A stretch of DNA of 64,000 nt from NCBI GenBank assembly GCA_950097015.1, contig CATNEN010000034.1:2418001-2482000 (forward strand), written 5' to 3'. Both the position numbers and the translations under genes were made by a program. How positions within the stretch are numbered: position 1 is the first letter of the stretch; each line of letters begins with the position of its first letter. Origin of the DNA: Macrostomum hystrix. Its lineage: Eukaryota; Animalia; Platyhelminthes. The notes beneath the pieces are model-generated. The model worked only from the letters and a program-made list of their open reading frames with translations. It searched no databases and was not told the DNA's origin. This document shows, one piece after another, positions 7,755-60,022 of this stretch.

Positions 7755-10700
7755 ATGTCCGTTGAGGCGGAGCTAAGATCAGAACTTTCACTTGTAAAGG
7801 AGGAAAATGCAAGGCTGCAAAATGAGCTAGATAGTGCTGTTAATGAAAAAATTCAAGCTGCACAGCATGGCTTGGCACTTCTAGAAGAGATTGGCCAATT
7901 AAAACATTCATTAGCAGAAACTGAGAATAATGCTGATATTCTCAAGCAAGAGCTCGATCTTGCAAGAAAGGTATGTTGTGTTCTATTTTATGATGTAGCT
8001 AGCTATCCTATATGTTAGTACTGTATAGCTAACATCTAATTCTAATCTAAAATAGACCAAGCTGCATGCCTTTACATCTGTACCTTTGGTTTGTTGACCT
8101 TTGATTTATATTGATGTTGTTTTCAGTGATAGGGCACTTTACAAAAGAGCAACAGCAAAGTGACAAAAACAATTGTTATTGACTATTTAGTTATGGACAA
8201 AATAGGTTACAAAAATAATATAATAATAATGGTGCTTAGCACAGATCTGTTATTTTTTTATGTAAGCATGCTATTAAAATGTGTAGCATTGTTTAATGGT
8301 CATTACTCATATCACATGTAGTGTCCACTTTTTTAAGACCACATTATCATTATCATTCTTACTGCTGTCAACCATTTGAGGCTTGGGTTCGGTAGTCATG
8401 AAAATCACATATATATTTCAGATTAGATTGATAATATTGATGATTGATGATAATACCATTGTTGTCAGATTACAGTAAGAAACTATAGTTGTAGTCTATC
8501 AATTGACCACTAAAAATTAGCAAAGTTTACATTTTGCAACAGAAATGAACAAAATAAATGCAAAATGTTATCCCTGTTAAACAAATAGACTGAAACATAA
8601 AGTTCACAATTATATAAATTTGACTCTCTTTTAAACTAGATATAAAAAATAACAACAAAAAAAGCTTTTTTAATGTAGCAAAAGAAGGCATTTACTATGT
8701 TGCTTATTTCTTTTTTATTTCAAAAACAGGTAATAGGGAATGCACACAGTTGGTAATGACTTGTTACTATCATCAGCCTGTGGTAAGGTTGCAAAAAGTA
8801 AAAATCATAACCAAATTGGTAAGTAGTAACAAGTATGGCACCAAATACTGGTTGTTTTAAGCACTATTGTTTTTTAAAAGCAGTTTTATAACTGCCAAGC
8901 TAAGGAAGGGTGATCAAGTGTATGATGACATTTTTATCATAAAAGTATTTTTTGTATTTAACTGCATATCTAGTGACCAAATTTTATAAAAAAAGAACCA
9001 AACAGAAAAAAATAATGCACATAGGCTACCCAATAGAAAACTCAAGCAACTGGTAGTTTTAACAAAATAAATGTATATAGAAAATTGGCTGATCATAAAT
9101 AAGTTAAGTACATATTTTTAGAATATTTAGGCCTAAGTACTAATACAATTTCTATATTTTAGGCTAGCTATTGTTTTAATTTATGTTTCAGTTAGCTAAT
9201 ATATTTACTTTTAATATTCATATTTTTAGCTAAGTGAAAGTTTATTTGATTCTTGCTTATAAAGATTTCAATTGCACACATCAATGTATAAAAATTACAT
9301 CAATTTTTTGAATGAAATAGCTAGCTTCATTTAGAATAATGTTTAGTGGCACAATTTTATGGATAATCACAAGAAGTTTTGCCTATCATGTACTTATATA
9401 GTATACTATTTGTATTCATGAATTCAATATAGTTGTTAACTTAGTTTAAGCTAAAATGTATAGAGCTTAATGATTCAAAGGCATATCTATTCCTGGAGTT
9501 CTAGCTAGTGTTCCACCTTGGTTTTATGTTTTTTAGTTTGAACTTTTTTGTTTCAAGACCTACTTATGCTTTGTAATTAAAAACACTCTTGTTTGTTGCA
9601 CTGCATAAATTAAATTATACATATAAATAATTAATGCTTTAATCAGGCGGATTGCATATTTAGCTAACAGGTAAAAGTCAAAGTAAAAAATATTTGACAA
9701 ACAATTCCTGTAATTCTCTCATAGGCTCTGCAGCAGCGCAAGCTTCATCAGAAGCGGCAGGCTCAGGAGGGCCAGGCTGACGAGGACACCCTAATTAGCG
9801 AGTCGGCTAGCCGCGAGCAGGGCCTGCTCACCGCAATCAGCGAGCTGGAAGCCGAGCTAAAGTCGCGCACACTTCAGCTGGAGCGCAAGCAGGCTGACTC
9901 CGATCGGCTAGCCGAGGAGGCCACCGGACTCAACGAGGCGATGCGCCGACTGGAGGCCGACAAGAAGCAGCTGCGCGACGAGCTGAAAGAGATCAAAGCC
10001 AGGGAGACTCGCTGCCTAGCCGACTATTCGGAGCTGGAGGAGGACAATTTGGGCCTTCAGAAGCAGCTGCAGGAAGCCAAGCGGATGCTAATGGATTATC
10101 ACCTGATGCAGCACGACTGCAAGCGTCTAGCTGAGGAGACCGAGATTCTAGCCAGCCAGCTTGAGGAGGCTGGCAAGCTGCGCTCCATCTCCGAGCGGAA
10201 TCTGGCCGAAGCGCTGGAGTCATTGCAGATGGAACGGGAGGCTAAGCACTCGCTGCGTCGCGAGTTGGACGCCAAGCTCAATTCTGATAGCCTGGTGCAG
10301 CTCAATTTGAGCACTCTGTCGCGCAATTTGGAATCTTCTTTCGGTTCGGCTGTGGCCGCCGCCGCTTCATCCGCGACTGCTGGCGCGCAGAGTCGCCAGG
10401 TTAGCTAATGCTTGATTGCGAATGTAGTCTACTGAAACCGAATGAAAATGACTGAAACTCAAGTAGTGTGACTGAAACCGAATGAAAATGACTGAAACTC
10501 AAGGAGTGTGACTGAAACTGAATGAGAGTGACTGAAACTCAAGGAGTGTGACTGAAACTGAATGAGAGTGACTGAAACTTAAGGAGTGTGACTGAAACTG
10601 AATCAAAGTAACAGGAAGGAAAGCGAGCGAGTGAGTGAAAGGGAGGTGAGAGCGTGACTGAAACGGAGGTGGGAGAGTGACTGAAAGAGAGGTGAGAGCG

Positions 10701-13700
10701 TCACTGAAACGGAGGTGGGAGAGTAACTGAAAGGGAGGTGAGAGAGTGACTGAAACGGAGGTGGGAAAGTGACTGAAAGGGAGGTGAGAGCGTGACTGAA
10801 ACGGAGGTGGGAGAGTGACTAAAAGGGAGTTGAGAGAGTGACTAAAAGGATGTGAGGGAGTGACTAAAAGGGAGTTAAGAGAGTGACTAAAAGGATGTGA
10901 GGGAGTGACTAAAAGGGAGGTGAGAGAGTGACTAAAAGGGAGGTGAGAGAGTGACTAAAAGGGAGGTGAGAGAGTGACAAAAAGGGAGTTGAGAGAGTGA
11001 CTAAAAGGGAGGTGAGAGAGTGACTAAAAGGATGTGAGGGAGTGACTAAAAGGGAGGTGAGAGAGTGACTAAAAGGGAGGTGAGAGAGTGACTAAAAGGG
11101 AGTTGAGAGAGTGACAAAAAGGGAGGTGAGAGAGTGACTAAAAGGGAGGTGAGAGAGTGACTAAAAGGGAGTTGAGAGAGTGACTAAAAGGGAGGTGAGA
11201 GAGTGACTAAAAGGGAGTTGAGAGAGTGACTAAAAGAATGTGAGGGAGTGACTAAAAGGGAGGTGAGAGAGTGACCAAAAGGGAGGTGAGAGAGTGACCA
11301 AAAGGGAGGTGAGAGAGTGACTAAAAGGGAGTTGAGAGAGTGACAAAAAGGGAGGTGAGAGAGTGACTAAAAGGGAGGTGAGAGAGTGACTAAAAGGGAG
11401 GTGAGAGAGTGACTAAAAGGGAGGTGAGAGAGTGACTAAAAGGGAGTTGAGTGAGTGACTAAAAGGGAGGTGAGAGAGTGACTAAACGGGAGGTGAGAGA
11501 GTGACTAAAAGGGAGTTAAGAGAGTGACTAAAAGGGAGTTAAGAGAGTGACTAAAAGGGAGTTGAGAGAGTGACTAAAAGGGAGGTGAGAGAGTGACTAA
11601 AAGGGAGGTGAGAGAGTGACTAAAAGGGAGGTGAGAGAGTGACTAAAAGGGAGGTGAGAGAGTGACTAAAAGGGAGGTGAGAGAGTGACTAAAAGGGAGG
11701 TGAGAGAGTGACTAAAAGGGAGGTGAGAGAGTGACTAAAAGGGAGTTGAGAGAGTGACTAAAAGGGAGGTGAGAGAGTGACAAAAAGGGAGTTGAGAGAG
11801 TGACTAAAAGGGAGGTGAGAGAGTGACTAAAAGGGAGGTGAGAGAGTGACTAAAAGGGAGGTGAGAGAGTGACTAAAAGGGAGTTGAGAGAGTGACTAAA
11901 AGGGAGGTGAGAGAGTGACTAAACGGGAGTTGAGTGAGTGACTAAAAGGGAGGTGAGAGAGTGACTAAAAGGGAGGTGAGAGAGTGACTAAAAGGGAGGT
12001 GAGAGAGTGACTAAAAGGGAGGTGAGAGAGTGACTAAAAGGGAGGTGAGAGAGTGACAAAAAGGGAGTTGAGAGAGTGACTAAAAGGGAGGTGAGAGAGT
12101 GACTAAAAGGGAGGTGAGAGAGTGACTAAACGGGAGTTGAGAGAGTGACTAAAAGGGAGGTGAGAGAGTGACTAAAAGGGAGGTGAGAGAGTGACTAAAA
12201 GGGAGGTGAGAGAGTGACTAAAAGGGAGGTGAGAGAGTGACTAAAAGGGAGGTGAGAGAGTGACTAAAAGGGAGGTGAGAGAGTGACTAAACGGGAGTTG
12301 AGAGAGTGACTAAAAGGGAGGTGAGAGAGTGACTAAAAGGGAGGTGAGAGAGTGACAAAAAGGGAGTTGAGAGAGTGACTAAAAGGGAGGTGAGAGTGAC
12401 TAAAAGGGAGGTGAGAGAGTGACTAAACGGGAGTTGAGAGAGTGACTAAAAGGGAGGTGAGAGAGTGACTAAAAGGGAGGTGAGAGAGTGACTAAAAGGG
12501 AGTTGAGAGAGTGACTAAAAGGGAGTTGAGAGAGTGACTAAAAGGGAGGTGAGAGAGTGACTAAAAGGGAGTTGAGAGAGTGACTAAAAGGGAGGCGAGG
12601 GAGTCACTGAAAGGGAATTAAGAGGGTGACTTAAACTGGAAAAATGCTGCTCTAATAATCAACCTGCTAGTTTTATCCGTTAGGAAGCACACCTTTGGCT
12701 AATTAAGCCAAGTACTCAGCGGAAGACATTCTTAAGTGTGGCGGGCTATTATTTCTGATTGTATTTAAAGCGAAACAAAAATTATGAAATTTGCTCAGAC
12801 TTCGTAAATCAGAAAGCAACAAGCATGACGACAAATTATTCTTAGTATTCAGTTAGTGCTAATTTAAACAGTTCCATTCTGCATTTCCTATGTTCGAATG
12901 CTAAGCAAGACTATGTGAATGTTTTAAAGAATGTAGTTCAATGCTGTTGAATAGTGTTGGGTTTAGCTTAGATGTTGGGTTTTACTATGTTTATAGTAAA
13001 ATTTAACTGCCAAGTTATATCTAGCCATTTTTATCAGATCTGAAAATTGTAGTCTTATTTTGTAACCTCGCTAGTTGCTAGACCAAGTGCCTCGTAGTCA
13101 ACTGTTTTATTTAACTTTGCGTCGAAAATTTGACGCCTTTACTAGTAGCGTACGATTTACGAATTTCGAGGCATAAAATTGTGGCCATATTATTGGACAA
13201 ATAATTCAATTAACGATATTCTGTAGGTTAAGTTTGTTGTTTATCGTTAAATAAGAAAACTAAGCTATTTTTAAAGTCAAACAATACTTAATTCACATTT
13301 TTAATAAATATTATATTGGCAGGAAGGCTGTGGGTAATGATACTGTACGCAGACACACTCACACATGTGTGTACATCTGCCCTGACGTTCTCATAGTCAG
13401 GCAGTGTACGGCTCGTACACTCAAACTAGGAGATTGGCCCTCAAATTTGTAAATTTTCTCAACCTCTGGGCGCGGAATCGAGCTCTTAGTGCGAGAGGCG
13501 AAAGCGTTAAGTTTACGTGAAGCGCTTTTATTTAGTTGAATTAAACAGTTGAAAAATGCGAAGATATCTTAATGTCTTATGATACCGAATGCACGACAAA
13601 AATTCTACGAGTATATTGATTGATTAAAAAGCTAGGGCGGATAGCTCAGTCAGTAAGGTGTCGGACTCTGGATCAGATGGTCCTGGGTTCGACTCCCGAC

Positions 13701-30394: not shown

Positions 30395-32750
30395 CCGTGT
30401 ATTATGGGATTCTGCACTGAGGTTTATGCCACTCCAATCTGTGTTATGGGATTCTGCAGTGAGGTTTATGCCACTCAAATCTGTGTTATGGGATTCTGCA
30501 GTGAGGTTTATGCCACTCAAATCTGTGTTATGGGATTCTGCTGAGGTTTACGCCACTCAAATCTGTGTTATGGGATTCAGCTGTGAGGTTTACGCCACTC
30601 AAATCTGTGTTATGGGATTCTGCTGTGAGGTTTACGCCACTCAAATCTGTGTTATGGGATTCAGCTGTGAGGTTTACGCCACTCAAATCTGTGTTATGGG
30701 ATTCAGCCGTGAGGTTTATGCCACTCCAATCTGTGTTATGGGATTCTGCTGAGGTTTACGCCACTCCAATCTGTGTTATGGGATTCTGCTGAGGTTTACG
30801 CCACTCCAATCTGTGTTATGGGATTCTGCTGAGGTTAACGCCACTCAAATCTGTGTTATGGGATTCAGCAGTGAGGTTTACGCCACTCAAATCTGTGTTA
30901 TGGGATTCAGCAGTGAGGTTTACGCCACTCAAATCTGTTTTATGGGATTCTGCTGTGAGGTTTACGCCACTCCAATTTTTGTTATGGGATTCTGCTGTGA
31001 GGTTTACGCCACTCAAATCTGTGTTATGAGATTCTGCTGTGAGGTTTACGCCACTCAAATCTGTGTTATGAGATTCTGCTGTGAGGTTTACGCCACTCAA
31101 ATCTGTGTTATGGGATTCTGCTGAGGTTTACGCCACTCAAATCTGTGTTATGGGATTCTGCTGTGAGGTTTATGCCACTCCAATCTGTTTTATGGGATTC
31201 TGCTGTGAGGTTTACGCCACTCAAATCTGTGTTATGGGATTCTGCTGAGGTTTTTGCCACTCAAATCTGTGTTATGGGATTCTGCTGAGGTTTACGCCAC
31301 TCAAATCTGTGTTATGGGATTCTGCTGAGGTTTACGCCACTCAAATCTGTGTTATGGGATTCTGCTGAGGTTTACGCCACTCAAATCTGTGTTATGGGAT
31401 TCAGCTGTGAGGTTTACGCCACTCAAATCTGTTTTATTGGATTCTGCTGTGAGGTTTACGCCACTCCAATTTTTGTTATGGGATTCTGCTGTGAGGTTTA
31501 CGCCACTCAAATCTGTGTTATGAGATTCTGCTGTGAGGTTTACGCCACTCAAATCTGTGTTATGGGATTCTGCTGTGAGGTTTACGCCACTCAAATCTGT
31601 GTTATGGGATTCTGCTGTGAGGTTTACGCCACTCCAATCTGTTTTATGGGATTCTGCTGTGAGGTTTATGCCACTCAAATCTGTGTTATGGGATTCTGCT
31701 GTGAGGTTTACGCCACTCCAATCTGTATTATGGGATTCTGCTGTGAGGTTTATGCCACTCAAATCTGTGTTATGGGATTCAGCTGTGAGGTTTATGCCAC
31801 TCCAATCTGTGTTATGGGATTCTGCTGTGAGGTTTACGCCACTCAAATCTGTGTTATGGGATTCTGCTGTGAGGTTTACGCCACTCAAATCTGTGTTATG
31901 GGATTCTGCTGTGAGGTTTACGCCACTCAAATCTGTGTTATGAGATTCTGCTGTGAGGTTTACGCCACTCAAATCTGTGTTATGGGATTCTGCTGTGAGG
32001 TTTACGCCACTCAAATCTGTGTTATGGGATTCAGCCGTGAGGTTTATGCCACTCCAATCTGTGTTATGGGATTCTGCTGAGGTTTACGCCACTCAAATCT
32101 GTGTTATGGGATTCTGCTGAGGTTAACGCCACTCAAATCTGTGTTATGGGATTCAGCAGTGAGGTTTACGCCACTCAAATCTGTGTTATGGGATTCAGCA
32201 GTGAGGTTTACGCCACTCAAATCTGTGTTATGGGATTCAGCAGTGAGGTTTACGCCACTCAAATCTGTTTTATGGGATTCTGCTGTGAGGTTTACGCCAC
32301 TCCAATTTTTGTTATGGGATTCTGCTGTGAGGTTTACGCCACTCAAATCTGTGTTATGAGATTCTGCTGTGAGGTTTACGCCACTCAAATCTGTGTTATG
32401 AGATTCTGCTGTGAGGTTTACGCCACTCAAATCTGTGTTATGGGATTCTGCTGTGAGGTTTACGCCACTCAAATCTGTGTTATGGGATTCTGCTGTGAGG
32501 TTTATGCCACTCCAATCTGTTTTATGGGATTCTGCTGTGAGGTTTACGCCACTCAAATCTGTGTTATGGGATTCTGCTGAGGTTTATGCCACTCAAATCT
32601 GTGTTATGGGATTCTGCTGAGGTTTACGCCACTCAAATCTGTGTTATGGGATTCTGCTGAGGTTTACGCCACTCAAATCTGTGTTATGGGATTCTGCTGA
32701 GGTTTACGCCACTCCAATCTGTTTTATGGGATTCTGCAGTGAGGCTTATG
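30395..32750. repeat. 42-bp (40-bp variant) minisatellite, ~2.35 kb
   Basis: (GTGAGGTTTACGCCACTCAAATCTGTGTTATGGGATTCTGCT)n. Confidence 0.95.
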
Positions 32751-40893: not shown

Positions 40894-42300
40894 TTCTTGT
40901 GAAGATTAGGAAATAATATGTACTGAGCTTGATAACTAAAATACTGTGATAAAAACAGCTATCATGGCACAAAAAAAGAATTTAACTTTATCAATTTAGA
41001 AAATAAAGAAGCTGCAGATAACCTTTGCAAGAAAAATACAAAGAAAATCAATCATCTGTGTTTATGCTTTAAAAAACGTGCGCAATTTAGTTTTTTAACG
41101 TTATTAAAACTTTTTTTATCTAAGAACTGTGGAATAAAAATATTTGACTAGCTTATTTCACAATTATAATACCGATTTTATTTCCAAAATAAAGTTTTGT
41201 GCCTGGTACATTTGTTTTACTTTATTTACTCAAAACGGTTTGCACTGTTCATTGTTAAACTAAACTCTTAATTCTAGATTAAAAAATAATGCTAAATTTA
41301 GGGTCCAACTAGGGTCCAGCTTTTGCGCGAATTTTTTAAGAGCTTAATGCAGTTTTGCTGGGTGACAACTGCAATTTAAAAGAAAGCAATTACAAGAAAA
41401 ATTGGAAATAAAATACGTTCAATTTTGGAACATAACTAATAACCATGGCTAGTTAAAAGGCTCGTTTTGAAAGTAAATAGCAGTGGGTTAGTTGGACGCG
41501 AGCTATTGTAGTAGCTAACTGCACATGTACTGCAGTATTACAGGAGAAAAAAAATAATGGCTTGTTCGATTTACTAACTACCGTGAGGGAGGATTGAGTA
41601 TAATATAAAATACGCTTTTCGAAATGAACGAAATTCACAAAGATTATATTTAAAATCACCCCCGAATACTATAATCAATATAGGATTTTGATTAGTCCTG
41701 TTGTGCACCGAACAATTTTGCTGAATTCTTTAACGAGCAAGTAGTAAAAAAGTCAAGAAAATATTTTTTGAGCTGTCTGTGAGATAAAAAACGGAAAATT
41801 AGAACAGTTTACTTAACTGGAAGTATATTTTATCATATTTAATTGGCTAGTAAATTAGCTAGTAATTAAAGTTAAAAGGCTCATTTTGAAAGTACTCTGC
41901 TAGGTGTGCAGTAAACTGTGTGGAAGTAGAGGTAGGGCTGTTTGTAGCAGTCTGTCACTTATGATAGATTTGAAATAAGTAAACCGAAATAGTAGAACCG
42001 AAAAAATCGATGCGTAACTGTGGTGATAAAAGCATGCAGCCTTGATCTTATTTAAAGCGAAAGATTATGAAACTGTTGACTAATAGGGGCAACTATTACT
42101 TTAGTTGTTAATAGTAAGTTAGTTAATAGTAATATTACTATTACTATTACAATTGATTACTACTGTACTCTTATACGTGTAGTAACGAGAAGGTGGTAAA
42201 ATTGAGGGTGAAATTACTGGTGCAATTATTTGAGTCAGGAGTAATACAGTTTGATTATTGAGTCGATTTGTTCACTAGCTACTGTTTGTTCCTGGACGAT

Positions 42301-42746
42301 TTAGCAGCAGGACTTGTAGGTGCACTTCGTCTTGGCCGGCTCATCGCAAACCTTGGTAGTTGTAGTGTAGGTGCGCTGGAAAAAGAGAGGTATACAATAG
42401 AGTTTTTTTAGTTTACATCAGCAAGTAGTAGGTCAAATTATAGTCTTGCGAAACGTTGCTTCTCGCCTACCTTCTGCTCGGTGACGCAGCAGGTCGCGCC
42501 GCATGGGCTGCAAGCCGGGGCGCACGGGCTGCAAGCCGGGGCGCACGGGTTGCACGCCGGGGCGCACGGGTTGCACGCCGGGGCGCACGGGTTGCACGCC
42601 GGGGCGCACGGGTTGCACACCGGAGCGCACACAGGGGCGCACGGGCTGCAAGCCGGGGCGCACGGGTTGCACACTGGAGCGCACGGGTTGCACACCGGAG
42701 CGCACACAGGGGCGAAGGTGGTCTGGGTGCTGCAGAAGGACGACAT
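42301..42746 (-). CDS. Cys/Pro-rich small protein B, 116 aa (27 Cys); exons 42746-42471, 42375-42301
   Basis: AAG|GTAGG donor and TTTTTCCAG acceptor; CAP(A/V)C(N/S)P heptads; C-terminal exon RTYTTTTKVCDEPAKTKCTYKSCC* is homologous to that of the neighbouring gene. Confidence 0.85.
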
Positions 42747-43257
42747 GATGGCTGGTGACTAGGTGGAGGTGAAGCTCGCAAGCTGAAATTGTAAAATAAT
42801 GTTCTTTTAAGCGGATTTCTTTATAAAAGAAGACTTTACTAAAAAAAACTTTTTGTTGGCACGTGTGACCTACGACTCTAAGACTAACTAGGAAAATAGT
42901 CACGTACTTAAATAAATGTTAAATCCTTAAAGACGAAGCTATTTGAAGTAGGAATTAAAATAAAGAGTCCAGAAGTCAACAACTGGTCTTTACTGAAATA
43001 AATCAATATTATATCTGCAAGTCGAGTTTCATGAATACTAGAAAATAAAGCTATACTGTTCTTTGTTATTCAAAAAGTTTTTCAAGTCGTCCACTAAAGG
43101 GAGCTAATTATTATAGTTTGACCGGAATAAAGGAGCGGTGCAGAGTGTTATTGACCCTAGTAAGCTTGTATGATGCGGACTGAGGCTGCAGTTGCTTGTC
43201 AGGGATATCTAGTTTAAAAAACGTAGTGGTGGAGTTCGGTATGGTCTTAATAGTCCA

Positions 43258-43263
43258 TTTATT
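43258..43263 (-). terminator. Polyadenylation signal AATAAA of Cys/Pro-rich gene A
   Basis: About 80 nt downstream of the TGA at 43340. Confidence 0.55.
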
Positions 43264-43339
43264 GTCCAGAAATTTCCAGCAATGTAGATTGCTTCAGTTG
43301 CTCCACCACTCGCAGCCAGCCTGCTCAGTCAGTGTGAGC

Positions 43340-43849
43340 TCAGCAACACGGCTTCTCAGAGCCCTTGCAGTAGTAGCTGGTCTTCGCTGGCTTGTCGCAC
43401 ACCTTGGTGGTCGTCAGGTACGTTCTCTGTTCGGGTGGAAGCAAGTTGGTTTACTTCAGTATTTCTTAAATATTTTTTCCCTTCTTTTCTTTCATTTATT
43501 TCTTTAGAAATAAAAAAATTACCTTCTGCTCAGTTGAGCAGCAGGTCTTGCCGCACGGAGCACTGCATAGCGGGCTGACGTATTGCGACTGCACACTAGA
43601 GCAGGCTGGAGCGCAGGGCGCGCTGCACGGAGCCACACAGGGCTGGACGCTCGTGTAGGCCGGAGCGCAGGGCGCGCTGCACGGAGCCACACAGGGCTGG
43701 ACGCTCGTGTAGGCCGGAGCGCAGGGCGCGCTGCACGGAGCAAAGCAGGGGGCCGCTGAGCATTGAACTGGGGCGCGCTGCAGGTAAGGCCCCATAGCTG
43801 AGTACTGCAGGCCGCACGGATTGCTGCTGTAGTTGTAGTTGAAGGCCAT
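43340..43849 (-). CDS. Cys/Pro-rich small protein A, 137 aa (20 Cys); exons 43849-43523, 43426-43340
   Basis: TTGCAG acceptor 5 nt before the ATG; AAG|GTAAT donor; APCSAPCAPA repeats; last exon RTYLTTTKVCDKPAKTSYYCKGSEKPCC*; same intron position (TEQK|RTY) as the paralog. Confidence 0.87.
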
Positions 43850-43954
43850 GTTATCTGCAAGGTAAAACAACGGGGGTAAGTTAAGCCAAAGATCATTCGA
43901 TCGTCATACTTCTCTGAACGTTGCCACACAAGACAAGGCCAGGTATAGCCTCAC

Positions 43955-44068
43955 CTGGTAGTGTAGGCTGGCACTGCTGAGACTGTAGGCTGAGCTATCT
44001 CGAGTTGCTTTCACCGTTGAAGCTTGGAAGATGCTCTTTCTGCCCGCCCAGCCAGCCTTCTATTTATC
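43955..44068 (-). promoter_or_regulatory. Putative TATA-like box (44067-44061) and non-coding first exon ending at CAG|GTGAG (43955)
   Basis: GGATAAATAG upstream of an ATG-less stretch ending in a consensus donor, which pairs with the acceptor at 43857-43855. Confidence 0.45.
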
Positions 44069-44584
44069 CTATCAGGTCTGGGGGGAGGTCGACTCCGAGA
44101 CAACTGCGCAGCGGCGAACTGCAGTGCCAGTTCCTGTTTCTCGTCGGTCGAATTAAACTTCAGCATAGAAAGGAAGAGACACAAATAGTTCTGAGCAGAG
44201 TTGAGTTCGGCTTCTGAGAACTTCGCAAAAGCATGGCGGAAAACGGAACTGCAGCTGTGTAATTTTAGTCCCGATTAAATTTCTTTAGGTTCAGCGTTTA
44301 AATTAGGAATTTCCAGTCGCATCATTGCTTTTTGCGAGCCTCTATTGCACTCTATCGCACCGATGCGCTTGTGGACAAACTCAATTTGACTGCAAACTAT
44401 GTTTAGAAAATAAAGCAGTGGTCAATTATTGTAGCAATTGTGTTGGTCAAAATTGTTGTGAGCTCTAGCCTTTCAAACTATCCTTGTCAACCTATTTTTA
44501 TCAAAAAAATTCGAAAAGTTTGATATGAATACCGCATTACACTGCACAAAAACCACGAAGACATCTTGGTACACTAATACATCG

Positions 44585-44935: not shown

Positions 44936-44984
44936 TCGCTCGGGTACTTCACCACCTCCTCGGGCACTCCACCGCCACCTTGGG

Positions 44985-45405
44985 CACTCTATCGCCTCCT
45001 CCTCACACAACTCACCTCCTCCTCATACAAATCACCTCCTCCTCATACAAATCACCTCCTCCTCACACAACTCACCTCCTCCTCATACAAATCACCTCCT
45101 CCTCATACAAATCACCTCCTCCTCATACAACTCACCTCCTCCTCATACAACTCACCTCCTCCTCATACAACTCCCCTCCTCCTCATACAACTCACCTCCT
45201 ACTCATACAACTCACCTCCTCCTCATACAACTCACCTCCTACTCATACAACTCACCTCCTCCTCATACAACTCACCTCCTCCTCATAAAACTCACCTCCT
45301 CCTCATACAACTCACCTCCTCCTCATACAACTCACCTCCTCCTCATACAACTCACCTCCTCCTCATACAACTCACCTCCTCCTCAGGCACCTCAACTCCT
45401 CCTCT
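44985..45405. repeat. 20-bp minisatellite (CCTCATACAACTCACCTCCT)n
   Basis: Period 20. Confidence 0.92.
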
Positions 45406-46004
45406 ACCCCACATCCGCCAGAAAGTCTCTTAAAAGAAACATGCCACCTAGTCTGGCTCAATCATGCAGTCAACGTTTTTCACTGTTGACCAAAATTTTA
45501 AACCAGACTATCTCTAATTAAGGTCTGTAAGTAGATGGCAAAATCTGAAATCTGAGAGTCGTTTTTGGTTTGTTGCATAAAGTGGCTTCTAAAATTTTTC
45601 TACGAACTTGTGCCAGCCAATCTTAGTGACAGCCAAGTATCGATTCTATTTTACAGTAGATGGTTGAACTGTTTATGCACGGTTACAACTGCCCACTCTC
45701 TGCAACCTTGCTGACAGGTGATGATTACGCAAGCTAAGTTCATAAATATGTTTATATAACAAGTTCATCCTGCGCCACTTTGACCAGTGCAGTTGAGAAT
45801 TTGTCTCTCCGCCAAGATTGAAATCGTATGCGTCTGCATTCAGAACAGGCATCTGATGCAATTTCAGTTCAAATGTAAACAGAACGACCTCAAAGACTTC
45901 ACTGCGTCCTACACAGGATTTAGCCTCGACAATGATTATAGGACATACGCCTTGAGTGATCTATAGAAACAGACAGCAAATACCGAGATATATACAGACG
46001 GATC

Positions 46005-46302
46005 GGACAGACAGACAGCCGGACACAGCAGACAGACAGACAGACAGACATACAGGCAGACAGACAATGAGACAAACAGACAGACAGACAGGCAGAACAA
46101 CAGGCAGACAGACAGGCAGACAGACAGGCAGACAGACAGGCAGACAAACAGGCTGACAGACAGGCAGACAGACAGACAGACACACAGGCAGGCAGGCAGG
46201 CAGACGGACAGGCAGGCAGGCAGACGGACAGGCAGGCAGGCAGGCAGGCAGAGAGACAGACAGACACCCAGCACAGAGAGAAAGACAGAAAGACAGAGAG
46301 AC

Positions 46303-46359
<57 letters not shown>

Positions 46360-46452
46360 CACAGAGAGACAGACAGAAAGACTGTCAGAAAGACAGACAG
46401 ACACTGGCGGACAGACAGAAAGACAGACAGGCAGGCAGATAGGCAGACAGAC
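46005..46452. repeat. Compound (CAGA)n/(CAGG)n microsatellite
   Basis: Direct reading. Confidence 0.92.
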
Positions 46453-49161
46453 ATACGGGTAGGCAACTGAAGTGATATGATTACTGTATCCCTCAATGAA
46501 CACTTGCCCTTAGTGACAATCTGTAGCAATTATGCAGCAGAATTGAGTAAGCCTTAAAAGTGACCTATGCAGTGTCTTCAACGTATATGGAAAGCAGGGT
46601 CCTCGATAAAAGAGTGGCTTCGCAATAAACTGATGCTTTGAGATTGCCGCTTGCATACCAGATCATGCATTTATAGATTATTTAGTAAATCAGTACAAAC
46701 GCAGTAACTGGTACGAAGCGGGGGCAACCTCATTTGAGTATATAGTGAATGTTGATTTTCAATCCTGGAATCTCACCTCTTGTAACAGTACGTATATATA
46801 GAATATTATTGCTTTCAACTAAACCTGAAAGCTAATTTGCTGCAGCAGCGAAAGGCGGTGTTAGCGCATTTATATCCACACACTGGGGTGTGCGTATGTG
46901 CTTTGGTTGTGAGGTTGGGCTGAATACAGTCGACCCTCCACTCACACACACAGAAAGCCTCCGCCTAAAATGTCTGCTTACAGCGCTCGCAAGCCATATG
47001 AATGTAATTCCACTGCATGCATGCTGTACAATATCAAGTACACGCACTGCCAGATTAGGCCCTCTTAACCAAGCGTTTTCTGTGACAGCTAAAACCCTCT
47101 CCTTGTCTCTAGAACTATGCGTATGTTGTGTGTGCTGAACCTGCAGCTGCCTGCCTGTATCTGCCCCTTCAACCCACTGCCTGACTCTCTCTCTCAATAG
47201 CATTTGAGTAAGCATTTGGTCGCCACTAGCAACCAGCATATGTATGTACAGTACACTAGCTTATTCTACCACAAATATACACTCGCTGGGGCAGGAATTA
47301 ATAGGCGAATTCTTTGTAACGCGTGCTCCTGTACGAAGTGTGCGAGCTTACGAATTTAAAGTCAGTTCGCAAACTAATTCTAAATAGCAGATTTATAAAA
47401 GCCTTTAAATCATTATCAATGCATTACTCTAACCTGTTCAATATAGTGAGACAATTTTGACTTGTGACTAATCTAAAGCAGTGGAGTGACAGTTTTAGTT
47501 AAAGTCAGCTTTGCTTTCAGAACAGCAGCGAAGCATTTCTAATAGTAAAATGAATTCTTGTGTGTTGAATATACTGAATATTGTGATATCGTGTGGAGCG
47601 TTTTTACTACTAGCCGTCGCATTTAATTTACTCGTATTTGCACCATTGGCTCGGACCCTCCGAGTCCGCTGTTCCTTCTATCCTTATTCCATTTAACAAT
47701 CGATTTGTAAATCAATTGTCTCGAAAGTTACTAAACTGACCAACTCACAAATTCGAGGTACTCTACTAGCAGTACTTTATACTCTTAGTCTGAGCTAATA
47801 GGCAGAAAACTAAAAAAACACAGCATATAAGTAATTCTGAAAATTATATTATCTGTATTATAAAAAATCTGTTCGGTGCATAGATGGAAGGCCAATCGGA
47901 CTCGAAACATCAATATGCTGCCTGAAACACCTCTTCGGCTATACACCCCGACCGACGGATAGTAGGACTGCAAGCAGCTCCTGTCAGACTCCTGTGTTCT
48001 GACCGCTACTGTCAGGCAATAAGAATTTTGCCTGTTTTTACACTGGCGAAAGCGGCAATGCTCGGCAGAAGCGGCAGTCTCTCATCAAAAGTGTGCCCCA
48101 CCTTGAGCTCCTATCGACCGGACCACTGCTCTGCTCCATCCGCACACAGTTCCCAGATGTCGGAGTCGCGGAGCTGCTCAGCTTGCTCCTAAATATACAC
48201 GGTCTCATTGAACTCATTGTAACTGAGAGTATCGTGTAAAATGCTCCAATCATGTGTCTCTGAGTTTTTTGTTTATTGCTAGCTAGCATATATGCATCAA
48301 GATGCATCAGTGCATCAATAAATAATTTACTGTTTAACATTTTGTCCTGCACTTTTTCAAATTGTCAAATTTTGCATTTTGTCCTGCATTTGTCTCTATT
48401 ACTATAAGTCTGAACATTTTCCAGTTAGTTGGCCCAGAGTACTTAAAAGCCGTCGAAGTTCACTTTTCACTTCTCACTTGTAAAAGATGTCACACTGGTG
48501 GATCGAATTGTCCCAAATGTCTTTGTTAAGACGAGTTTGGCATCAGAGTCTAAACGAAAAAACGATACGAAAGAAACGACCTATTTTGTTTTATTTTTTT
48601 TAAATTGGATTTGAAGTGATAAATGTCTCGGAAAATTCGGCAGTAGGTGAGAAAAAGTTTTTTGGTTAGCTATTTTCCATATTTCTTTTAGGTTTATGTT
48701 ATTATTGTCTGTACACTAATATTTAATATTCCTGACTTTATATGTCTAGCCAGCTAGCCTTCTATCCACTAACAAAAAATGACGTGTTTCTGACTATGAC
48801 CTATCTAATAGTGATTATAAATAGTATAAGTACTGAACTGAACTGGTAGGCCTAGGCCTACTTTGTTGCCTCGTGACTTCGCAATACTCTTAGTAAAACT
48901 TTACAAACAACATAGCAAAGCTTTGTTGCATTGAACTAACAGAAAAAATAATCAGACTGGACAGGTCATTTTAAACTTTAAAAAATGTAAAGAACTGTCT
49001 TATCTTTCACAAATGTCATAATACCTGGTCATTGCTCGCGTGGCATGCTTTTTTTCTCAAGATTTTGCATAGCAGGGGTCAAAAAACTTATTTGTCAAAA
49101 TTGAAAGTGGCTCAAAATTGAATTTGACTGTCAAAATAGAATGCAGTTTTTTCATGGCAAA

Positions 49162-54384: not shown

Positions 54385-55728
54385 AGGAGATGAAGGGAGA
54401 GGAGGTAATGAAGGGAGAGGAGGGAGTGAAGGGAGAGGAGGTAATGAAGGGAGAGGAGGTAGTGAAGGGAGAGGAGGTAATGAAGGGAGAGGAGGTAGTG
54501 AAGGGAGAGGAGGTAGTGAAGGGAGAGGAGGTAGTGAAGGGAGAGGAGGTAATGAAGGGAGAGGAGGTAGTGAAGGGAGAGGAGGGAGTGAAGGGACAAG
54601 GGAGAGGAGGGAGTGAAGGGACAAGGGAGAGGAGGGAGTGAAGGGACAAGGGAGAGGAGGGAGTGAAGGGACAAGGGAGAGGAGGGAGTGAAGGGACAAG
54701 GGAGAGGAGGAGGGAGTGAAGGGACAAGGGAGAGGAGGGAGTGAAGGGACAAGGGAGAGGAGGGAGTGAAGGGACAAGGGAGAGGGGGAGTGAAGGGACA
54801 AGGGAGAGGAGGGAGTGAATGGACAAGGGAGAGGAGGGAGTGAAGGGACAAGGGAGAGGAGGGAGTGAAGGGACAAGGGAGAGGAGGGAGTGAAGGGACA
54901 AGGGAGAGGGGGAGTGAAGGGACAAGGGAGAGGAGGGAGTGAAGGGACAAGGGAGAGGAGGGAGTGAAGGGACAAGGGAGAGGAGGGAGTGAAGGGACAA
55001 GGGAGAGGAGGGAGTGAAGGGACAAGGGAGAGGAGGGAGTGAAGGGACAAGGGAGAGGAGGGAGTGAAGGGACAAGGGAGAGGAGGGAGTGAAGGGACAA
55101 GGGAGAGGAGGGAGTGAAGGGACAAGGGAGAGGAGGGAGTGAAGGGACAAGGGAGAGGAGGGAGTGAAGGGACAAGGGAGAGGAGGGAGTGAAGGGACAA
55201 GGGAGAGGAGGGAGTGAAGGGACAAGGGAGAGGAGGGAGTGAAGGGACAAGGGAGAGGAGGAGGGAGTGAAGGGACAAGGGAGAGGAGGGAGTGAAGGGA
55301 CAAGGGAGAGGAGGGAGTGAAGGGACAAGGGAGAGGAGGGAGTGAAGGGACAAGGGAGAGGAGGGAGTGAAGGGACAAGGGAGAGGAGGGAGTGAAGGGA
55401 CAAGGGAGAGGAGGAGGTAGTGAAGGGAGAGGAGGTAATGAAGGGAGAGGAGGGAGTGAAGGGACAAGGGAGAGGAGGGAGTGAAGGGACAAGGGAGAGG
55501 AGGGAGTGAAGGGACAAGGGAGAGGAGGGAGTGAAGGGACAAGGGAGAGGAGGAGGGAGTGAAGGGACAAGGGAGAGGAGGGAGTGAAGGGACAAGGGAG
55601 AGGGGGAGTGAAGGGACAAGGGAGAGGAGGGAGTGAATGGACAAGGGAGAGGAGGGAGTGAAGGGACAAGGTAGAGGAGGGAGTGAAGGGACAAGGGAGA
55701 GGAGGAGGGAGTGAAGGGACAAGGGACA
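54385..55728. repeat. Purine-rich minisatellite: 18-bp units then 25-bp (GTGAAGGGACAAGGGAGAGGAGGGA)n
   Basis: Direct reading. Confidence 0.95.
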
Positions 55729-57545: not shown

Positions 57546-60022
57546 ATGAGCAAAGTTCTAGAGCCCGCTGGCCTGGGAGTCGAACTGTCGCTGTCTTGGC
57601 TGCCAACAGATTTTGTGGCATCAGATATGGCCGGACCCTTCCACCTGGAGGCCTTCATGCCGCTGTACGACGATAAAGACTGGCCAATGTTCAAACAGAA
57701 ACACGCACAGCAGAAGTACATCAGTAGGTCGTTTCAGATCGGACAGTCAAGGTCAAATTTTCAACGGGCCGTCAGGTTAGTCATGCTCACTCCAAACTTC
57801 TCAATGATACATTCGCCCACGACGCAAAATCAATTGCATCTACTCATTTTCCAAGACCCTCTTCATTTGGAACCCTTTTCCTACGGAACCCTTTTCCTAC
57901 GGAACCCTTTTCCTACGGAACCCTTTTCCTACAGAACCCTTTTCCTACGGAACCCTTTTGCTACGGAACCCTTTTCCTACGGAACCCTTTTCCTACGGAA
58001 CCCTTTTCCTACGGAACCCTTTTCCTACGGAACCCTTTTCCTACGGAACCCTTTTCCTACGGAACCCTTTTCCTACGGAACCCTTTTCCTACTGAATCCT
58101 TTTCCTACGGAACCCTTTTCCTACGGAACCCTTTTCCTACGGAACCCTTTTCGTATGGAACCCTTTTCCTACGGAACCCTTTTCCTACGGAACCCTTTTC
58201 CTACGGAACCCTTTTCCTACTGAATCCTTTTCCTACGGAACCCTTTTCCTACGGAACCCTTTTCCTACGGAACCCTTTTCCTACGGAACCCTTTTCCTAC
58301 GGAACCCTTTTTCTACGGAACCCTTTTCCTACGGAACCCTTTTCCATGCAGCGGTCTGTACATCGGGCGAGCCGAAGTCGACGGTGACTGGCGCATCGGC
58401 ACTGTCCATTGGCAGTACAGAAGCGGTGCCTCTGGTGAAGTGCAGCGGCTACCGACGCTGCTGGATGGCCGTCAGATAAAGCGAGCGAAAGTGCCACCAT
58501 TGTTTATTTCAAACGAGACTGGCATTCGCGCCATCTGCAAGTATGAGGTCAGGACGATGTACTTTTTCACTTTACTTTTCACGGCTTCCTTTGCACTAGC
58601 CAATCAGATCCTTCAATGCCTCAGCTATACTTCAGTGCCTCAGCTATCCTTCAGTGCCTCAGCTATCCTTCAGTGCCTCAGCTATCCTTCAGTGCCTCAG
58701 CTATCCTTCAGTGCCTCAGCTATCCTTCAGTGCCTCAGCTATCGTTTAGTGCCTCAGCTATCGTTCAGTGCCTCAGCTATCCTTCAGTGCTTCAGCTATC
58801 TTTCAGTGCCTCAGCTATCCTTCAGTGCCTCAGCTATCCTTCAGTGCCTCAGCTATCCTTCAGTGCCTCAGCTATCCTTCAGTGCCTCAGCTATCCTTCA
58901 GTGCCTCAGCTATCCTTCAGTGCCTCAGCTATCCTTCAGTGCCTCAGCTATCCTTCAGTGCCTCAGCTATCGTTTAGTGCCTCAGCTATCGTTCAGTGCC
59001 TCAGCTATCCTTCAGTGCCTCAGCTATCCTTCAGTGCCTCAGCTATCCTTCAGTGCCTCAGCTATCGTTCAGTGCCTCAGCTATCCTTCAGTGCCTCAGC
59101 TATCTTTCAGTGCTTCAGCCATCCTTCTGTGCCTCAGCTATCCTTCAGTGCTTCAGCTATCCTTCAGTGCCTCAGCTATCTTTCAGTGCCTCAGCTATCT
59201 TTCAGTGCCTCAGCTATCCTTCAGTGCCTCAGCTATCCTTCAGTGCCTCAGCTATCGTTTAGTGCCTCAGCTATCGTTCAGTGCCTCAGCTATACTTCAG
59301 TGCCTCAGCTATCCTTCAGTGCCTCAGCTATCCTTCAGTGCCTCAGCTATCCTTCAGTGCCTCAGCTATCCTTCAGTGCCTCAGCTATCCTTCAGTGCCT
59401 CAGCTATCCTTCAGTGCCTCAGCTATCCTTCAGTGCCTCAGCTATCGTTTAGTGCCTCAGCTATCGTTCAGTGCCTCAGCTATCCTTCAGTGCCTCAGCT
59501 ATCCTTCAGTGCCTCAGCTATCCTTCAGTGCCTCAGCTATCCTTCAGTGCCTCAGCTATCCTTCAGTGCCTCAGCTATCCTTCAGTGCCTCAGCTATCCT
59601 TCAGTGCTTCAGCTATCCTTTAGCGCCTCAGCCACCTCTTCAGCACCTCATAAAAGCCGCGCCTATCGCAGATTCTTCGGCCGTCTTTTATCGGGAGTTT
59701 CCTCGGCCGGCCGCACCGATGGCATCCCTGGCGCGGCTGCAACGAGTCGCCACTCGGCGCTGTGGTGGCCGGCTGCGAGTCAGACAGGCCGCTGTACCTG
59801 GCCAGGACGGTGTTGAACAACCGGTTGCTGGCCGGTGAGTTCGCTCCGCACCGGCGCTCGGCTACGTTCGTATGCGACCCAGCCGATACTGTCCAATTCG
59901 ACGCTCAGGACGATTATACGTCAGAGAAGTTGAAACCCTGCCAGTTAGTTGATAATTTCGAAGTTCTGGTGCTGCAGGAACGCAGCGTGCACCCGGACAT
60001 TGCTAAGGTGTTTCGAATTTGA
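57546..60022 (+). CDS. DM9-repeat protein (~258 aa); exons 57546-57775, 58352-58547, 59672-60022
   Basis: Repeat 1 GLYIGRAEVDGDWRIGTV...YE|IL; repeat 2 WRGCNESPLGAVVAGCESDRPLYLARTVLNNRLLAGEFAP...FEVLV; both match the DM9 pattern. Junctions are frame-compatible (phases 2 and 0). The start and end could be extended by further exons. Confidence 0.78.
57868..58345. repeat. 16-bp minisatellite (GGAACCCTTTTCCTAC)n in DM9 intron 1
   Basis: Runs directly into the acceptor TTTTCCATGCAG. Confidence 0.94.
58612..59632. repeat. 19-bp minisatellite (CAGTGCCTCAGCTATCCTT)n in DM9 intron 2
   Basis: Period 19, ~54 units. Confidence 0.95.

What the first reader, a model, noticed from the sequence alone, without database searches (positions are those of the whole stretch)
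42301..43849. Tandem pair of novel Cys/Pro-rich proteins with a conserved TEQK-RTY-TTTKVCD-PAKT...CC C-terminus
Seen: two 116/137-aa paralogs (23% and 15% Cys) with different repeat regions (CAPACNP heptads versus APCSAPCAPA), the same intron position, a conserved non-repetitive C-terminal module, a terminal CC, and no signal peptide. Established: C-X-P repeats occur in sperm outer-dense-fibre proteins (ODF1, Drosophila Mst87F family) and keratin-associated proteins, and terminal CC can be lipidated. Inference: an undescribed intracellular disulfide- or metal-crosslinked structural family, for example sperm or cytoskeletal rods, or a metallothionein-like function.
Basis: partly seen in the sequence, partly recalled or inferred. 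Interest (0 to 1): 0.75.

Follow-up and report, generated by a model that had tools for sequence, protein, structure and literature searches.

The report
Flatworm-only cysteine-rich twin genes
Two neighbouring small genes in a Macrostomum flatworm encode cysteine- and proline-rich repeat proteins sharing a well-kept tail piece; they are real and have one unnamed relative in a sister species, but their job (probably a cross-linked internal building material) is only a guess.

Summary
On the minus strand lie two two-exon genes, A (116 aa, 23% Cys) and B (137 aa, 15% Cys). Each has a phase-0 GT..AG intron of 95/96 nt at the same place (TEQK|RTY), a different Cys/Pro/Ala repeat array and no signal-peptide-like start. 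A shared 28-codon module is under strong purifying selection (dN/dS about 0.1, synonymous sites saturated) while introns and flanks no longer align, so this is an old duplication of real coding genes. The genome matches the published Macrostomum hystrix assembly (220 Mb, 42 contigs) and holds only these two copies. A search of 1.84 billion proteins found one true relative: UniProt A0A1I8IME0, a 127-aa "Uncharacterized protein" of M. lignano. It is continuous across the predicted splice junction but lacks the terminal CC. The Pfam "male specific sperm protein" hit to gene A is a periodicity artefact: there is no C-G-P motif, gene B and the M. lignano protein do not hit, and the same repeats "hit" the RNA polymerase II tail at 2e-16. 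AlphaFold finds no fold. This is a Macrostomum-restricted, uncharacterised family. A disulfide-cross-linked intracellular matrix role is the best guess (about 0.4), and expression was not testable here.

The parts
42471..42746 (-). Gene A coding exon 1 (92 aa): start codon, then about 20 C-A-P-[AV] / C-[NS]-P units, ending in CGATCCVTEQK
   Evidence: Translation; tandem periods 21/42/63 nt; all 23 Cys codons are TGC and unit lengths are 9 or 12 nt, all multiples of 3
42376..42470 (-). Gene A intron, 95 nt, GTAGGC...TTTTTCCAG, phase 0
   Evidence: Read from the sequence. The junction TEQK|RTY is continuous in the M. lignano protein P0005
42301..42375 (-). Gene A coding exon 2 (24 aa + TAA): RTYTTTTKVCDEPAKT then a short Cys/Lys/Tyr tail ending in CC
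42820..42825 (-). TATAAA 79 nt upstream of the gene A start codon (putative promoter, inferred). An in-frame TAG lies 15 nt before the ATG
   Evidence: consensus only, no RNA evidence
43523..43849 (-). Gene B coding exon 1 (109 aa): Tyr-rich start MAFNYNYSSNPCGLQYSAMGPY, C-x3-C units with a 54-nt (18-aa) repeat, ending in CGKTCCSTEQK
   Evidence: It is 53-55% identical to M. lignano A0A1I8IME0 over its whole length
43427..43522 (-). Gene B intron, 96 nt, GTAATT...CGAACAG, phase 0, at the same position as in gene A
43340..43426 (-). Gene B coding exon 2 (28 aa + stop): RTYLTTTKVCDKPAKT then a tail ending in PCC
   Evidence: 75% identical to the matching part of P0005
43855..43954 (-). Putative 100-nt intron in the gene B 5'UTR (CAG|GTGAGG ... 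TTTTACCTTGCAG|ATAAC-ATG). The exon upstream of it (about 43955-44035) holds no ATG
   Evidence: Consensus reading; inferred, no RNA evidence
44061..44067 (-). ATAAATA, a TATA-like element upstream of the putative non-coding first exon of gene B
   Evidence: inferred
43258..43263 (-). AATAAA polyadenylation signal 77 nt after the gene B stop codon

Best explanation
These are two real, anciently duplicated protein-coding genes of a small family seen so far only in the flatworm genus Macrostomum: two copies in what is almost certainly M. hystrix, and one unnamed protein in M. lignano. Each protein lacks a signal peptide and is predicted to have no fixed fold. Each has a fast-changing array of cysteines spaced 3-4 residues apart between Pro/Ala, joined to a slowly evolving 28-residue Thr/Lys-rich module (PCG.xC.xTEQK-RTYxTTTKVCDxPAKT) and a short Cys/Tyr/Lys tail. 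Most likely mechanism (inferred, not shown): the proteins are made in the cytoplasm as extended chains. The conserved module docks them to a partner or to each other. The many thiols then form intermolecular disulfides on oxidation, giving an insoluble matrix. Keratin-associated proteins, sperm outer-dense-fibre and Mst84D-type proteins, and the C-x3-C domains of minicollagen work this way. Candidate sites are the intracellularly formed copulatory stylet, sperm structures, or epidermal or anchor-cell filament webs. Shown: gene structure, duplication, purifying selection, the cross-species relative, composition and periodicity, and lack of a predicted fold. Inferred: cross-linking, location and partner.
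For: Gene models and shared intron position. Purifying selection on the shared module: dN/dS 0.10, p 1e-5, with saturated dS and unalignable introns and flanks. Only two copies in the 220-Mb genome by peptide, degenerate DNA pattern and profile. One homolog among 1.84 billion representatives: P0005 = UniRef A0A1I8IME0, M. lignano, 127 aa, E 7.8e-7, aligned over residues 1-109 of the query, continuous across the TEQK|RTY junction and with a conserved start. It maps back to gene B exon by exon. Genome identity: 220,453,370 bp in 42 contigs against '~220 Mb ... 42 contigs' for M. hystrix (PMC10468722). Repeat periods are multiples of three. No hydrophobic N-terminal core. No confident fold: pLDDT 55 and 41. 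Cys number varies (27, 20, 15), as in repeat-length-variable matrix proteins. The nearest language-model look-alikes are SPRR, KAP and LCE clusters, all below 0.9, so leads only. Intracellular stylet formation in free-living flatworms is mentioned in PMC4398949; for Macrostomum itself it rests on my own recollection.
Against: There is no expression, localisation or biochemical evidence. The cytosol is reducing, so cross-linking needs a later oxidising step that is only assumed. The resemblance to KAP, ODF and Mst84D is compositional, not homologous. The conserved module is hydrophilic and Thr/Lys-rich, which would equally suit a regulatory or binding peptide. Only three family members are known, so conservation statistics rest on one paralog pair.
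Confidence: 0.4

Rival explanations
1. Metallothionein-like or thiol-buffer proteins: the Cys arrays bind Cu/Zn/Cd or buffer redox state in the cytoplasm.
For: Gene A is small, 23% Cys and poor in aromatics, with 9 C-x2-C and 11 C-x3-C motifs. It touches Pfam DUF326 exactly at the cut-off and copper-storage proteins (Csp3) in the PDB at 2e-4. It has no signal peptide.
Against: There are no C-x-C motifs, and the only CC pairs are one before TEQK and one at the end. Gene B has 14.6% Cys and about 9% Tyr+Phe, and the M. lignano relative has about 12% Cys with many Tyr. Cys number is not conserved, whereas a non-Cys module is. Csp proteins are four-helix bundles, which a Pro every 3-4 residues forbids. 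The same query hits the Pol II CTD at 2e-16, so these E-values reflect periodicity. No metallothionein Pfam family matched.
Confidence: 0.12
2. Members of the Drosophila Mst84D/Mst87F (Pfam MSSP) sperm-tail family, that is, an already characterised family.
For: Gene A exon 1 scores 29.9 bits (E 4e-7) against PF03940, above the 21.2-bit gathering score.
Against: There is no C-G-P tripeptide in any exon. Gene B and the M. lignano relative do not hit. The conserved module lies outside the match. In this genome the same model passes its cut-off on a non-coding CEPVCGI minisatellite frame.
Confidence: 0.03
3. An intrinsically disordered regulatory or adaptor protein whose working part is the conserved C-terminal peptide, with the Cys repeats a tolerated minisatellite-born spacer and no matrix role.
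For: Only the 28-residue module and the gene B N-terminus are conserved, and the repeats turn over freely. The genome is saturated with minisatellites that readily create Cys/Pro-rich frames. No fold is predicted.
Against: All three proteins keep a Cys every 3-4 residues through quite different repeat sequences, and the arrays stay in frame. This argues that the Cys periodicity itself is selected.
Confidence: 0.3
4. Secreted structural protein (eggshell, adhesive, rhabdite, or a minicollagen-like capsule wall) whose signal-peptide exon was missed.
For: Runs of C-x3-C ending in CC followed by a basic tail recall the minicollagen/NOWA Cys-rich domain pattern CXXXCXXXCXXXCXXXCC (PMC4195985; weak PDB hit to 2nx7 at E 0.94). 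Splice-acceptor-like sites lie just upstream of both ATGs.
Against: Gene A has an in-frame TAG 15 nt before its ATG. The gene B start MAFNYNY... aligns with the start of the M. lignano protein. The putative upstream exon of gene B contains no ATG. There are no G-X-Y collagen repeats, and the exact six-Cys pattern never occurs.
Confidence: 0.05
5. Not genes at all: GC-rich minisatellites that happen to be open in a Cys/Pro frame.
For: More than 165 places in the genome match gene A exon 1 at E<=1. The top 11 loci were read: seven hold Cys-rich minisatellite frames, and four hold no open frame above 10% Cys.
Against: dN/dS is 0.1 on the non-repetitive module. The intron position, ATG starts and stop codons are shared. 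Periods are multiples of 3. A cross-species protein spans the junction.
Confidence: 0.03

Closest known systems
UniProt A0A1I8IME0_9PLAT, 'Uncharacterized protein', Macrostomum lignano (127 aa)
   Same: True homolog, apparently the ortholog of gene B. It shares the Tyr-rich start (15 of 22 residues identical), C-x3-C Ala/Pro repeats, and the module PCGK.C.STEQKRTYLTTTKVCD.PAKT (25 of 28 identical). It is continuous across the splice junction.
   Different: It is shorter, has fewer Cys (15), and has different repeat units. It reads SCSS instead of TCCS before TEQK and ends ...GGRPCY instead of CC. It has no name, no Pfam family, and no mention in the full text of the papers held here.
Drosophila Mst84D/Mst87F sperm-tail proteins (Pfam PF03940 MSSP, PF22857) and the C-X-P repeats of mammalian ODF1
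   Same: Small, without a signal peptide, and built of Cys-x-Pro-type short repeats. Gene A has 19 C-x-P motifs and passes the MSSP gathering score.
   Different: No C-G-P motif and no HSP20/alpha-crystallin domain (ODF1). Those families have nothing like the conserved C-terminal module. Gene B and the M. lignano protein do not hit. The match is a periodicity artefact. What I say of ODF1 and the Mst genes beyond Pfam's descriptions is from my own knowledge.
Keratin-associated proteins, SPRR and LCE cornified-envelope proteins
   Same: Cys/Pro-rich, repeat-length-variable, tandemly duplicated small genes for intracellular cross-linked matrix. They are the nearest language-model look-alikes (scores 0.78-0.81).
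   Different: Scores are below the level where chance hits are common. There are no Pfam matches to Keratin_matx, LCE or similar families. They are vertebrate families with no shared module.
Minicollagen / NOWA cysteine-rich domains of cnidarian nematocysts
   Same: C-x3-C periodicity with Pro/Ala/Val between the cysteines, a closing CC, and a basic tail. It is a documented mechanism of polymerisation by disulfide reshuffling (PMC4195985, and the abstract of PMC4863159 as listed).
   Different: Those are secreted, with a signal peptide and propeptide, and flank a G-X-Y collagen helix with an exact six-Cys pattern. None of these features is present here. The PDB hit is at E 0.94 only.
Metallothioneins and bacterial copper-storage proteins (Csp, DUF326)
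   Same: High Cys content, small size, cytoplasmic. Gene A reaches the DUF326 cut-off and Csp3 at 2e-4.
   Different: No C-x-C motifs, many Pro, and aromatic-rich in gene B. Cys number is not conserved. A helical bundle is impossible with this much Pro.

Membership tests
Pfam PF03940 MSSP (Mst84D-type male specific sperm proteins) | Score above the curated gathering threshold in the family members | tested here: inconclusive
   Gene A exon 1 scores 29.9 bits against a 21.2 cut-off. Gene B exons, gene A exon 2 and M. lignano P0005 give no hit.
Pfam PF03940 MSSP (Mst84D-type male specific sperm proteins) | Cys-Gly-Pro tripeptide repeats | tested here: not met
   Zero CGP in all four exons; the units are CAP[AV], CNP and CSP.
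Pfam PF03940 MSSP (Mst84D-type male specific sperm proteins) | The match is specific rather than driven by periodic composition | tested here: not met
   The model also passes its cut-off on a non-coding CEPVCGI minisatellite frame in this genome. The same query scores 2e-16 against the RNA Pol II CTD with Cys aligned to non-Cys residues.
Pfam PF03940 MSSP (Mst84D-type male specific sperm proteins) | Male-germline, post-meiotic expression | not testable with these tools
ODF1 (outer dense fibre protein 1) | HSP20/alpha-crystallin domain followed by C-X-P repeats | tested here: not met
   C-x-P repeats are present in gene A (19) but there is no HSP20 or other domain hit in Pfam.
Metallothionein | High Cys content arranged mainly as C-x-C, C-C and C-x-x-C, with few aromatic residues | tested here: not met
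   C-x-C = 0. Gene B has 14.6% Cys with about 9% Tyr+Phe, and P0005 has about 12% Cys. No metallothionein Pfam hit.
Metallothionein | Metal binding and metal induction | not testable with these tools
   Needs wet-lab assays.
Minicollagen / NOWA cysteine-rich domain | Exact pattern C-x3-C-x3-C-x3-C-x3-C-C | tested here: not met
   Cys spacings are 4,3 alternating in A and runs of at most four C-x3-C in B. Only the last C-x3-C-C is shared. The pattern is taken from PMC4195985.
Minicollagen / NOWA cysteine-rich domain | Signal peptide, propeptide and G-X-Y collagen core | tested here: not met
   No hydrophobic N-terminal core, Gly is 1-3% of residues, and there are no GXY runs.
Copper storage protein (Csp, Pfam DUF326) | Cys-lined four-helix bundle | tested here: not met
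   DUF326 scores 20.4 bits, exactly the cut-off, for gene A only. Pro occurs every 3-4 residues. The AlphaFold model has pLDDT 55 with no confident helices.
New Macrostomum family (genes A and B + A0A1I8IME0) | C-terminal module PCG.xC.xTEQK-RTYxTTTKVCDxPAKT after a C-x2/3-C Pro/Ala array, with a phase-0 intron between K and R | tested here: met
   Present in both window genes and in P0005. The intron was verified in the two window genes only, because no M. lignano DNA was available.

The most novel reading that the evidence does not exclude
This genus-restricted family, born from coding minisatellites, may be the first molecular component of the intracellular 'sclerotic' hard parts of free-living flatworms (the copulatory stylet) or of their unusual aflagellate sperm. 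It would harden by disulfide polymerisation of C-x3-C arrays, as minicollagens do in cnidarian stinging capsules, but inside the cytoplasm. The conserved Thr/Lys module would act as the assembly handle.
Probability: 0.15. Interest if true: 0.6.

Novelty: new variant of a known kind. Interest (0 to 1): 0.33.

Why it matters
I know of no identified protein from flatworm hard structures (stylets, hooks, spines), and the paper searches here turned up none. Macrostomum is a model genus for sexual selection on stylet and sperm shape. A small, repeat-variable, Cys-rich cytoplasmic protein family limited to this genus is a reasonable candidate for such material. It could be tested quickly by in situ hybridisation and RNAi, both routine in M. 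lignano. If instead it proves to be one of the many lineage-specific genes with no striking role, it is still a clean example of a protein combining a free-running coding minisatellite with a strongly constrained short module. It is also a warning that Pfam MSSP and similar low-complexity models fire on periodic Cys/Pro sequence.

Tried and rejected
(1) Word-index protein searches with each exon 1. Gene B gave nothing. Gene A gave only three bacterial secreted proteins with chance C-A-P-x-C runs.

(2) A word-index search with the full-length M. lignano protein found only itself.

(3) The other hits of the 1.84-billion-protein search (P0004, P0006-P0009) are unrelated long repeat proteins.

(4) Genome-wide matches to gene A exon 1 and gene B exon 1 are minisatellite frames, not paralogs.

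(5) Mlig-sperm1, the 'novel flatworm-specific gene' of PMC5816591, is a different, folded family.

(6) The AlphaFold models of gene A exon 1 and of P0005 had low confidence, so no fold search was run on them.

(7) PDB sequence hits to the Pol II CTD and Csp3 were rejected as periodicity artefacts.

(8) No conserved non-coding blocks were found between the two genes.

(9) The bacterial promoter/terminator scan is irrelevant to a eukaryote.

(10) Expression look-up failed. The tables of PMC10468722 carry transcript ids without coordinates.

The full-length M. lignano protein returned by a tool served as the natural proxy. One local script counted amino-acid composition over both exon translations of each gene together; nothing else was done with joined sequence.

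(12) Exon 2 (24 and 28 aa) is too short for the large protein searches. The conserved module was therefore searched only in the window's own genome and, through P0005, in the word index.
Full report
**What is there.** Reading 41800-44400 and translating the minus strand confirms two adjacent two-exon genes.
- Gene A: exon 1 at 42471-42746 (92 aa), a 95-nt GT..AG intron at 42376-42470, and exon 2 at 42301-42375 (24 aa + TAA). The protein is 116 aa with 23.3% Cys, 18% Pro and 16% Ala.
- Gene B: exon 1 at 43523-43849 (109 aa), a 96-nt GT..AG intron at 43427-43522, and exon 2 at 43340-43426 (28 aa + stop). The protein is 137 aa with 14.6% Cys, 14% Pro, 14% Ala and 7% Tyr.
- Both introns are phase 0 and fall between the K of TEQK and the R of RTY.
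- Gene A is built of C-A-P-[AV] and C-[NS]-P units, with Cys spacings alternating 4 and 3 and DNA periods of 21/42/63 nt. Gene B uses C-x3-C units inside a 54-nt repeat present 2.6 times at 98% identity. All of these periods are multiples of three, unlike most of the strong minisatellites elsewhere in the window.
- Neither N-terminus has a signal-peptide-like hydrophobic core (no dedicated predictor was available).

**Are they genes or open minisatellite frames?** The question is real. The genome gives more than 165 matches to gene A exon 1, and of the top 11 loci I read, seven hold Cys-rich minisatellite frames and four hold no Cys-rich open frame. The answer comes from the non-repetitive part.
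- Over the 28 codons shared by the two genes (the last 12 of exon 1 and the first 16 of exon 2), 24 residues are identical.
- There are 12.7 synonymous and 8.3 non-synonymous differences: pS 0.64, pN 0.13, dS about 1.5 (saturated), dN/dS 0.10, Fisher p 1e-5.
- The introns (52 of 95 identical against 55 ± 2.4 for shuffles) and the 5' and 3' flanks no longer align.
- This is therefore an old duplication in which only the protein sequence of the module and the intron position have been kept.
- Each gene has its own TATA-like element: TATAAA 79 nt before the gene A ATG, and ATAAATA at 44061-44067 for gene B.
- Gene A has an in-frame TAG 15 nt before its ATG.
- Gene B appears to have a short non-coding first exon and a 100-nt 5'UTR intron (43855-43954), and an AATAAA 77 nt after its stop. 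These regulatory features are read from consensus only.

**Which genome, and how many copies?** The window's assembly has 220,453,370 bases in 42 contigs. That matches the published Macrostomum hystrix assembly, described as "~220 Mb ... 42 contigs" (PMC10468722). Earlier notes of this scan had already called the genome a Macrostomum flatworm. The C-terminal module occurs only twice in it, by peptide search, by a degenerate DNA pattern whose reversed control gave no match, and by a two-row profile.

**Relatives elsewhere.**
- Word-index searches with each exon 1 found nothing real.
- Because the claim rests on absence of relatives, I ran the exhaustive HMMER search of 1.84 billion representatives with gene B exon 1.
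- One genuine hit emerged: P0005, 127 aa, E 7.8e-7, 53% identity, aligned over the whole query. The other five hits are unrelated repeat proteins.
- P0005 is UniRef A0A1I8IME0, an "Uncharacterized protein" of Macrostomum lignano.
- It shares the Tyr-rich start (15 of 22 residues), Ala/Pro C-x3-C repeats, and the module (25 of 28 residues identical to gene B).
- It runs straight through ...STEQKRTYLTTTKVCDQPAKT.... This supports the predicted exon junction from an independent annotated model.
- It maps back to gene B exon by exon and weakly to gene A exon 2, and to nothing else with the module.
- It has no Pfam family and appears in no paper text.
- It ends in ...GGRPCY and reads SCSS before TEQK.

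**The one match to a characterised family.** Gene A exon 1 scores 29.9 bits (E 4e-7) against Pfam MSSP, the Drosophila Mst84D-type sperm proteins, above the 21.2-bit cut-off. It sits exactly on the cut-off of DUF326. I do not accept this as membership, for four reasons.
- The defining C-G-P tripeptide is absent.
- Gene B and the M. lignano protein do not hit.
- The conserved module lies outside the match.
- Two controls show the score comes from periodicity. In this genome the MSSP model also passes its cut-off on a non-coding CEPVCGI minisatellite frame. Against the PDB, the same gene A exon scores 2e-16 on the heptad tail of RNA polymerase II with every Cys opposite a non-Cys, and 2e-4 on copper-storage proteins.

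Gene B exon 1 has no PDB hit. The best hits of P0005 are insignificant. One of them, a NOWA cysteine-rich domain at E 0.94, pointed me to the minicollagen pattern CXXXCXXXCXXXCXXXCC (PMC4195985). Those proteins are secreted collagens, however, and the exact pattern never occurs here.

**Structure.** AlphaFold gives pLDDT 55 for gene A exon 1 alone and 41 for P0005 with the five-row alignment. Neither shows a confident fold, so I ran no fold search. Language-model neighbours (SPRR5, KAP3-1-like, LCE, KAP16-1-like) score 0.76-0.81, a range that shuffled sequences also reach. They describe composition and no more.

**How it most likely works.** Shown:
- a small protein without a signal peptide or a predicted fold;
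- a Cys every 3-4 residues, kept through three quite different repeat arrays;
- free variation in repeat number (27, 20 and 15 Cys);
- one strongly constrained hydrophilic Thr/Lys module.

Inferred: the chains are made in the cytoplasm, brought together or onto a partner by the module, and locked by intermolecular disulfides into an insoluble matrix. That is the logic of keratin-associated proteins, sperm dense-fibre proteins and minicollagen Cys-rich domains. Intracellular stylet formation is recorded for other free-living flatworms (PMC4398949); that the Macrostomum stylet forms the same way is my recollection of older ultrastructural work. The stylet, sperm structures and filament webs are therefore plausible sites. 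I put this reading at about 0.4.

The rivals:
- a disordered adaptor whose only working part is the module (0.3);
- a metallothionein-like thiol or metal buffer (0.12), weakened by zero C-x-C motifs, the Tyr richness of gene B, and the unconserved Cys number;
- a secreted protein with a missed signal exon (0.05);
- true MSSP membership (0.03);
- no gene at all (0.03).

**Limits.**
- Expression could not be read.
All searches were exon by exon by reference, and the natural M. lignano protein served as the full-length proxy. One local script counted composition over both exon translations of each gene.
- Exon 2 is too short for the large searches. Absence of the module outside Macrostomum is therefore shown only as far as gene B exon 1 and the P0005 word search can see.
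- No M. lignano or M. cliftonense DNA was reachable, so an ortholog of gene A remains unsought.

**Verdict.** This is a real, old tandem pair belonging to a Macrostomum-restricted family that is uncharacterised, though not unrecorded, since one unnamed UniProt entry exists. It is not a member of any described family. Its design resembles known Cys-rich cross-linked matrix proteins, but with its own conserved module. Lineage-specific small genes are common in this genus, and nothing here fixes the function, so interest is moderate at 0.33.

Noticed in passing
window 1-64000 (e.g. 10616-12635, 30398-32748, 54574-55726, 58608-59632): The window is packed with long, clean minisatellites: about 20 arrays with TRF score >=400, periods of 14-46 nt, and up to 88 copies at 92-96% identity. 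They account for the strong local GC-skew swings.
   Followed up: partly
G000:C7:5786352-5786444 (L037) and other loci: Minisatellite frames such as CEPVCGICEPVCGI pass the Pfam MSSP gathering score. More than 165 loci match gene A's repeats. Low-complexity Cys/Pro Pfam models give false positives in this genome.
   Followed up: yes
window 42471-42746 (-): Gene A's CAPACNP heptads score E 2e-16 against the YSPTSPS heptads of RNA polymerase II in the PDB. This is purely from shared Pro periodicity and shows how misleading E-values are for periodic queries.
   Followed up: yes
window 43855-44067 (-): Gene B seems to have a non-coding first exon behind a TATA-like ATAAATA and a 100-nt 5'UTR intron ending 5 nt before the ATG. 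Gene A also has an acceptor-like TTTTACAATTTCAG 36 nt before its ATG, which could be a spliced-leader trans-splice site.
   Followed up: partly
window 44980-45404 and 45920-46529: Just upstream of gene B lie a 20-nt minisatellite and an (ACAG)n-like array. Both are open in long frames (PPPHTTHLLLIQ..., CLSVCLSV...) that look like proteins but are probably not coding.
   Followed up: no
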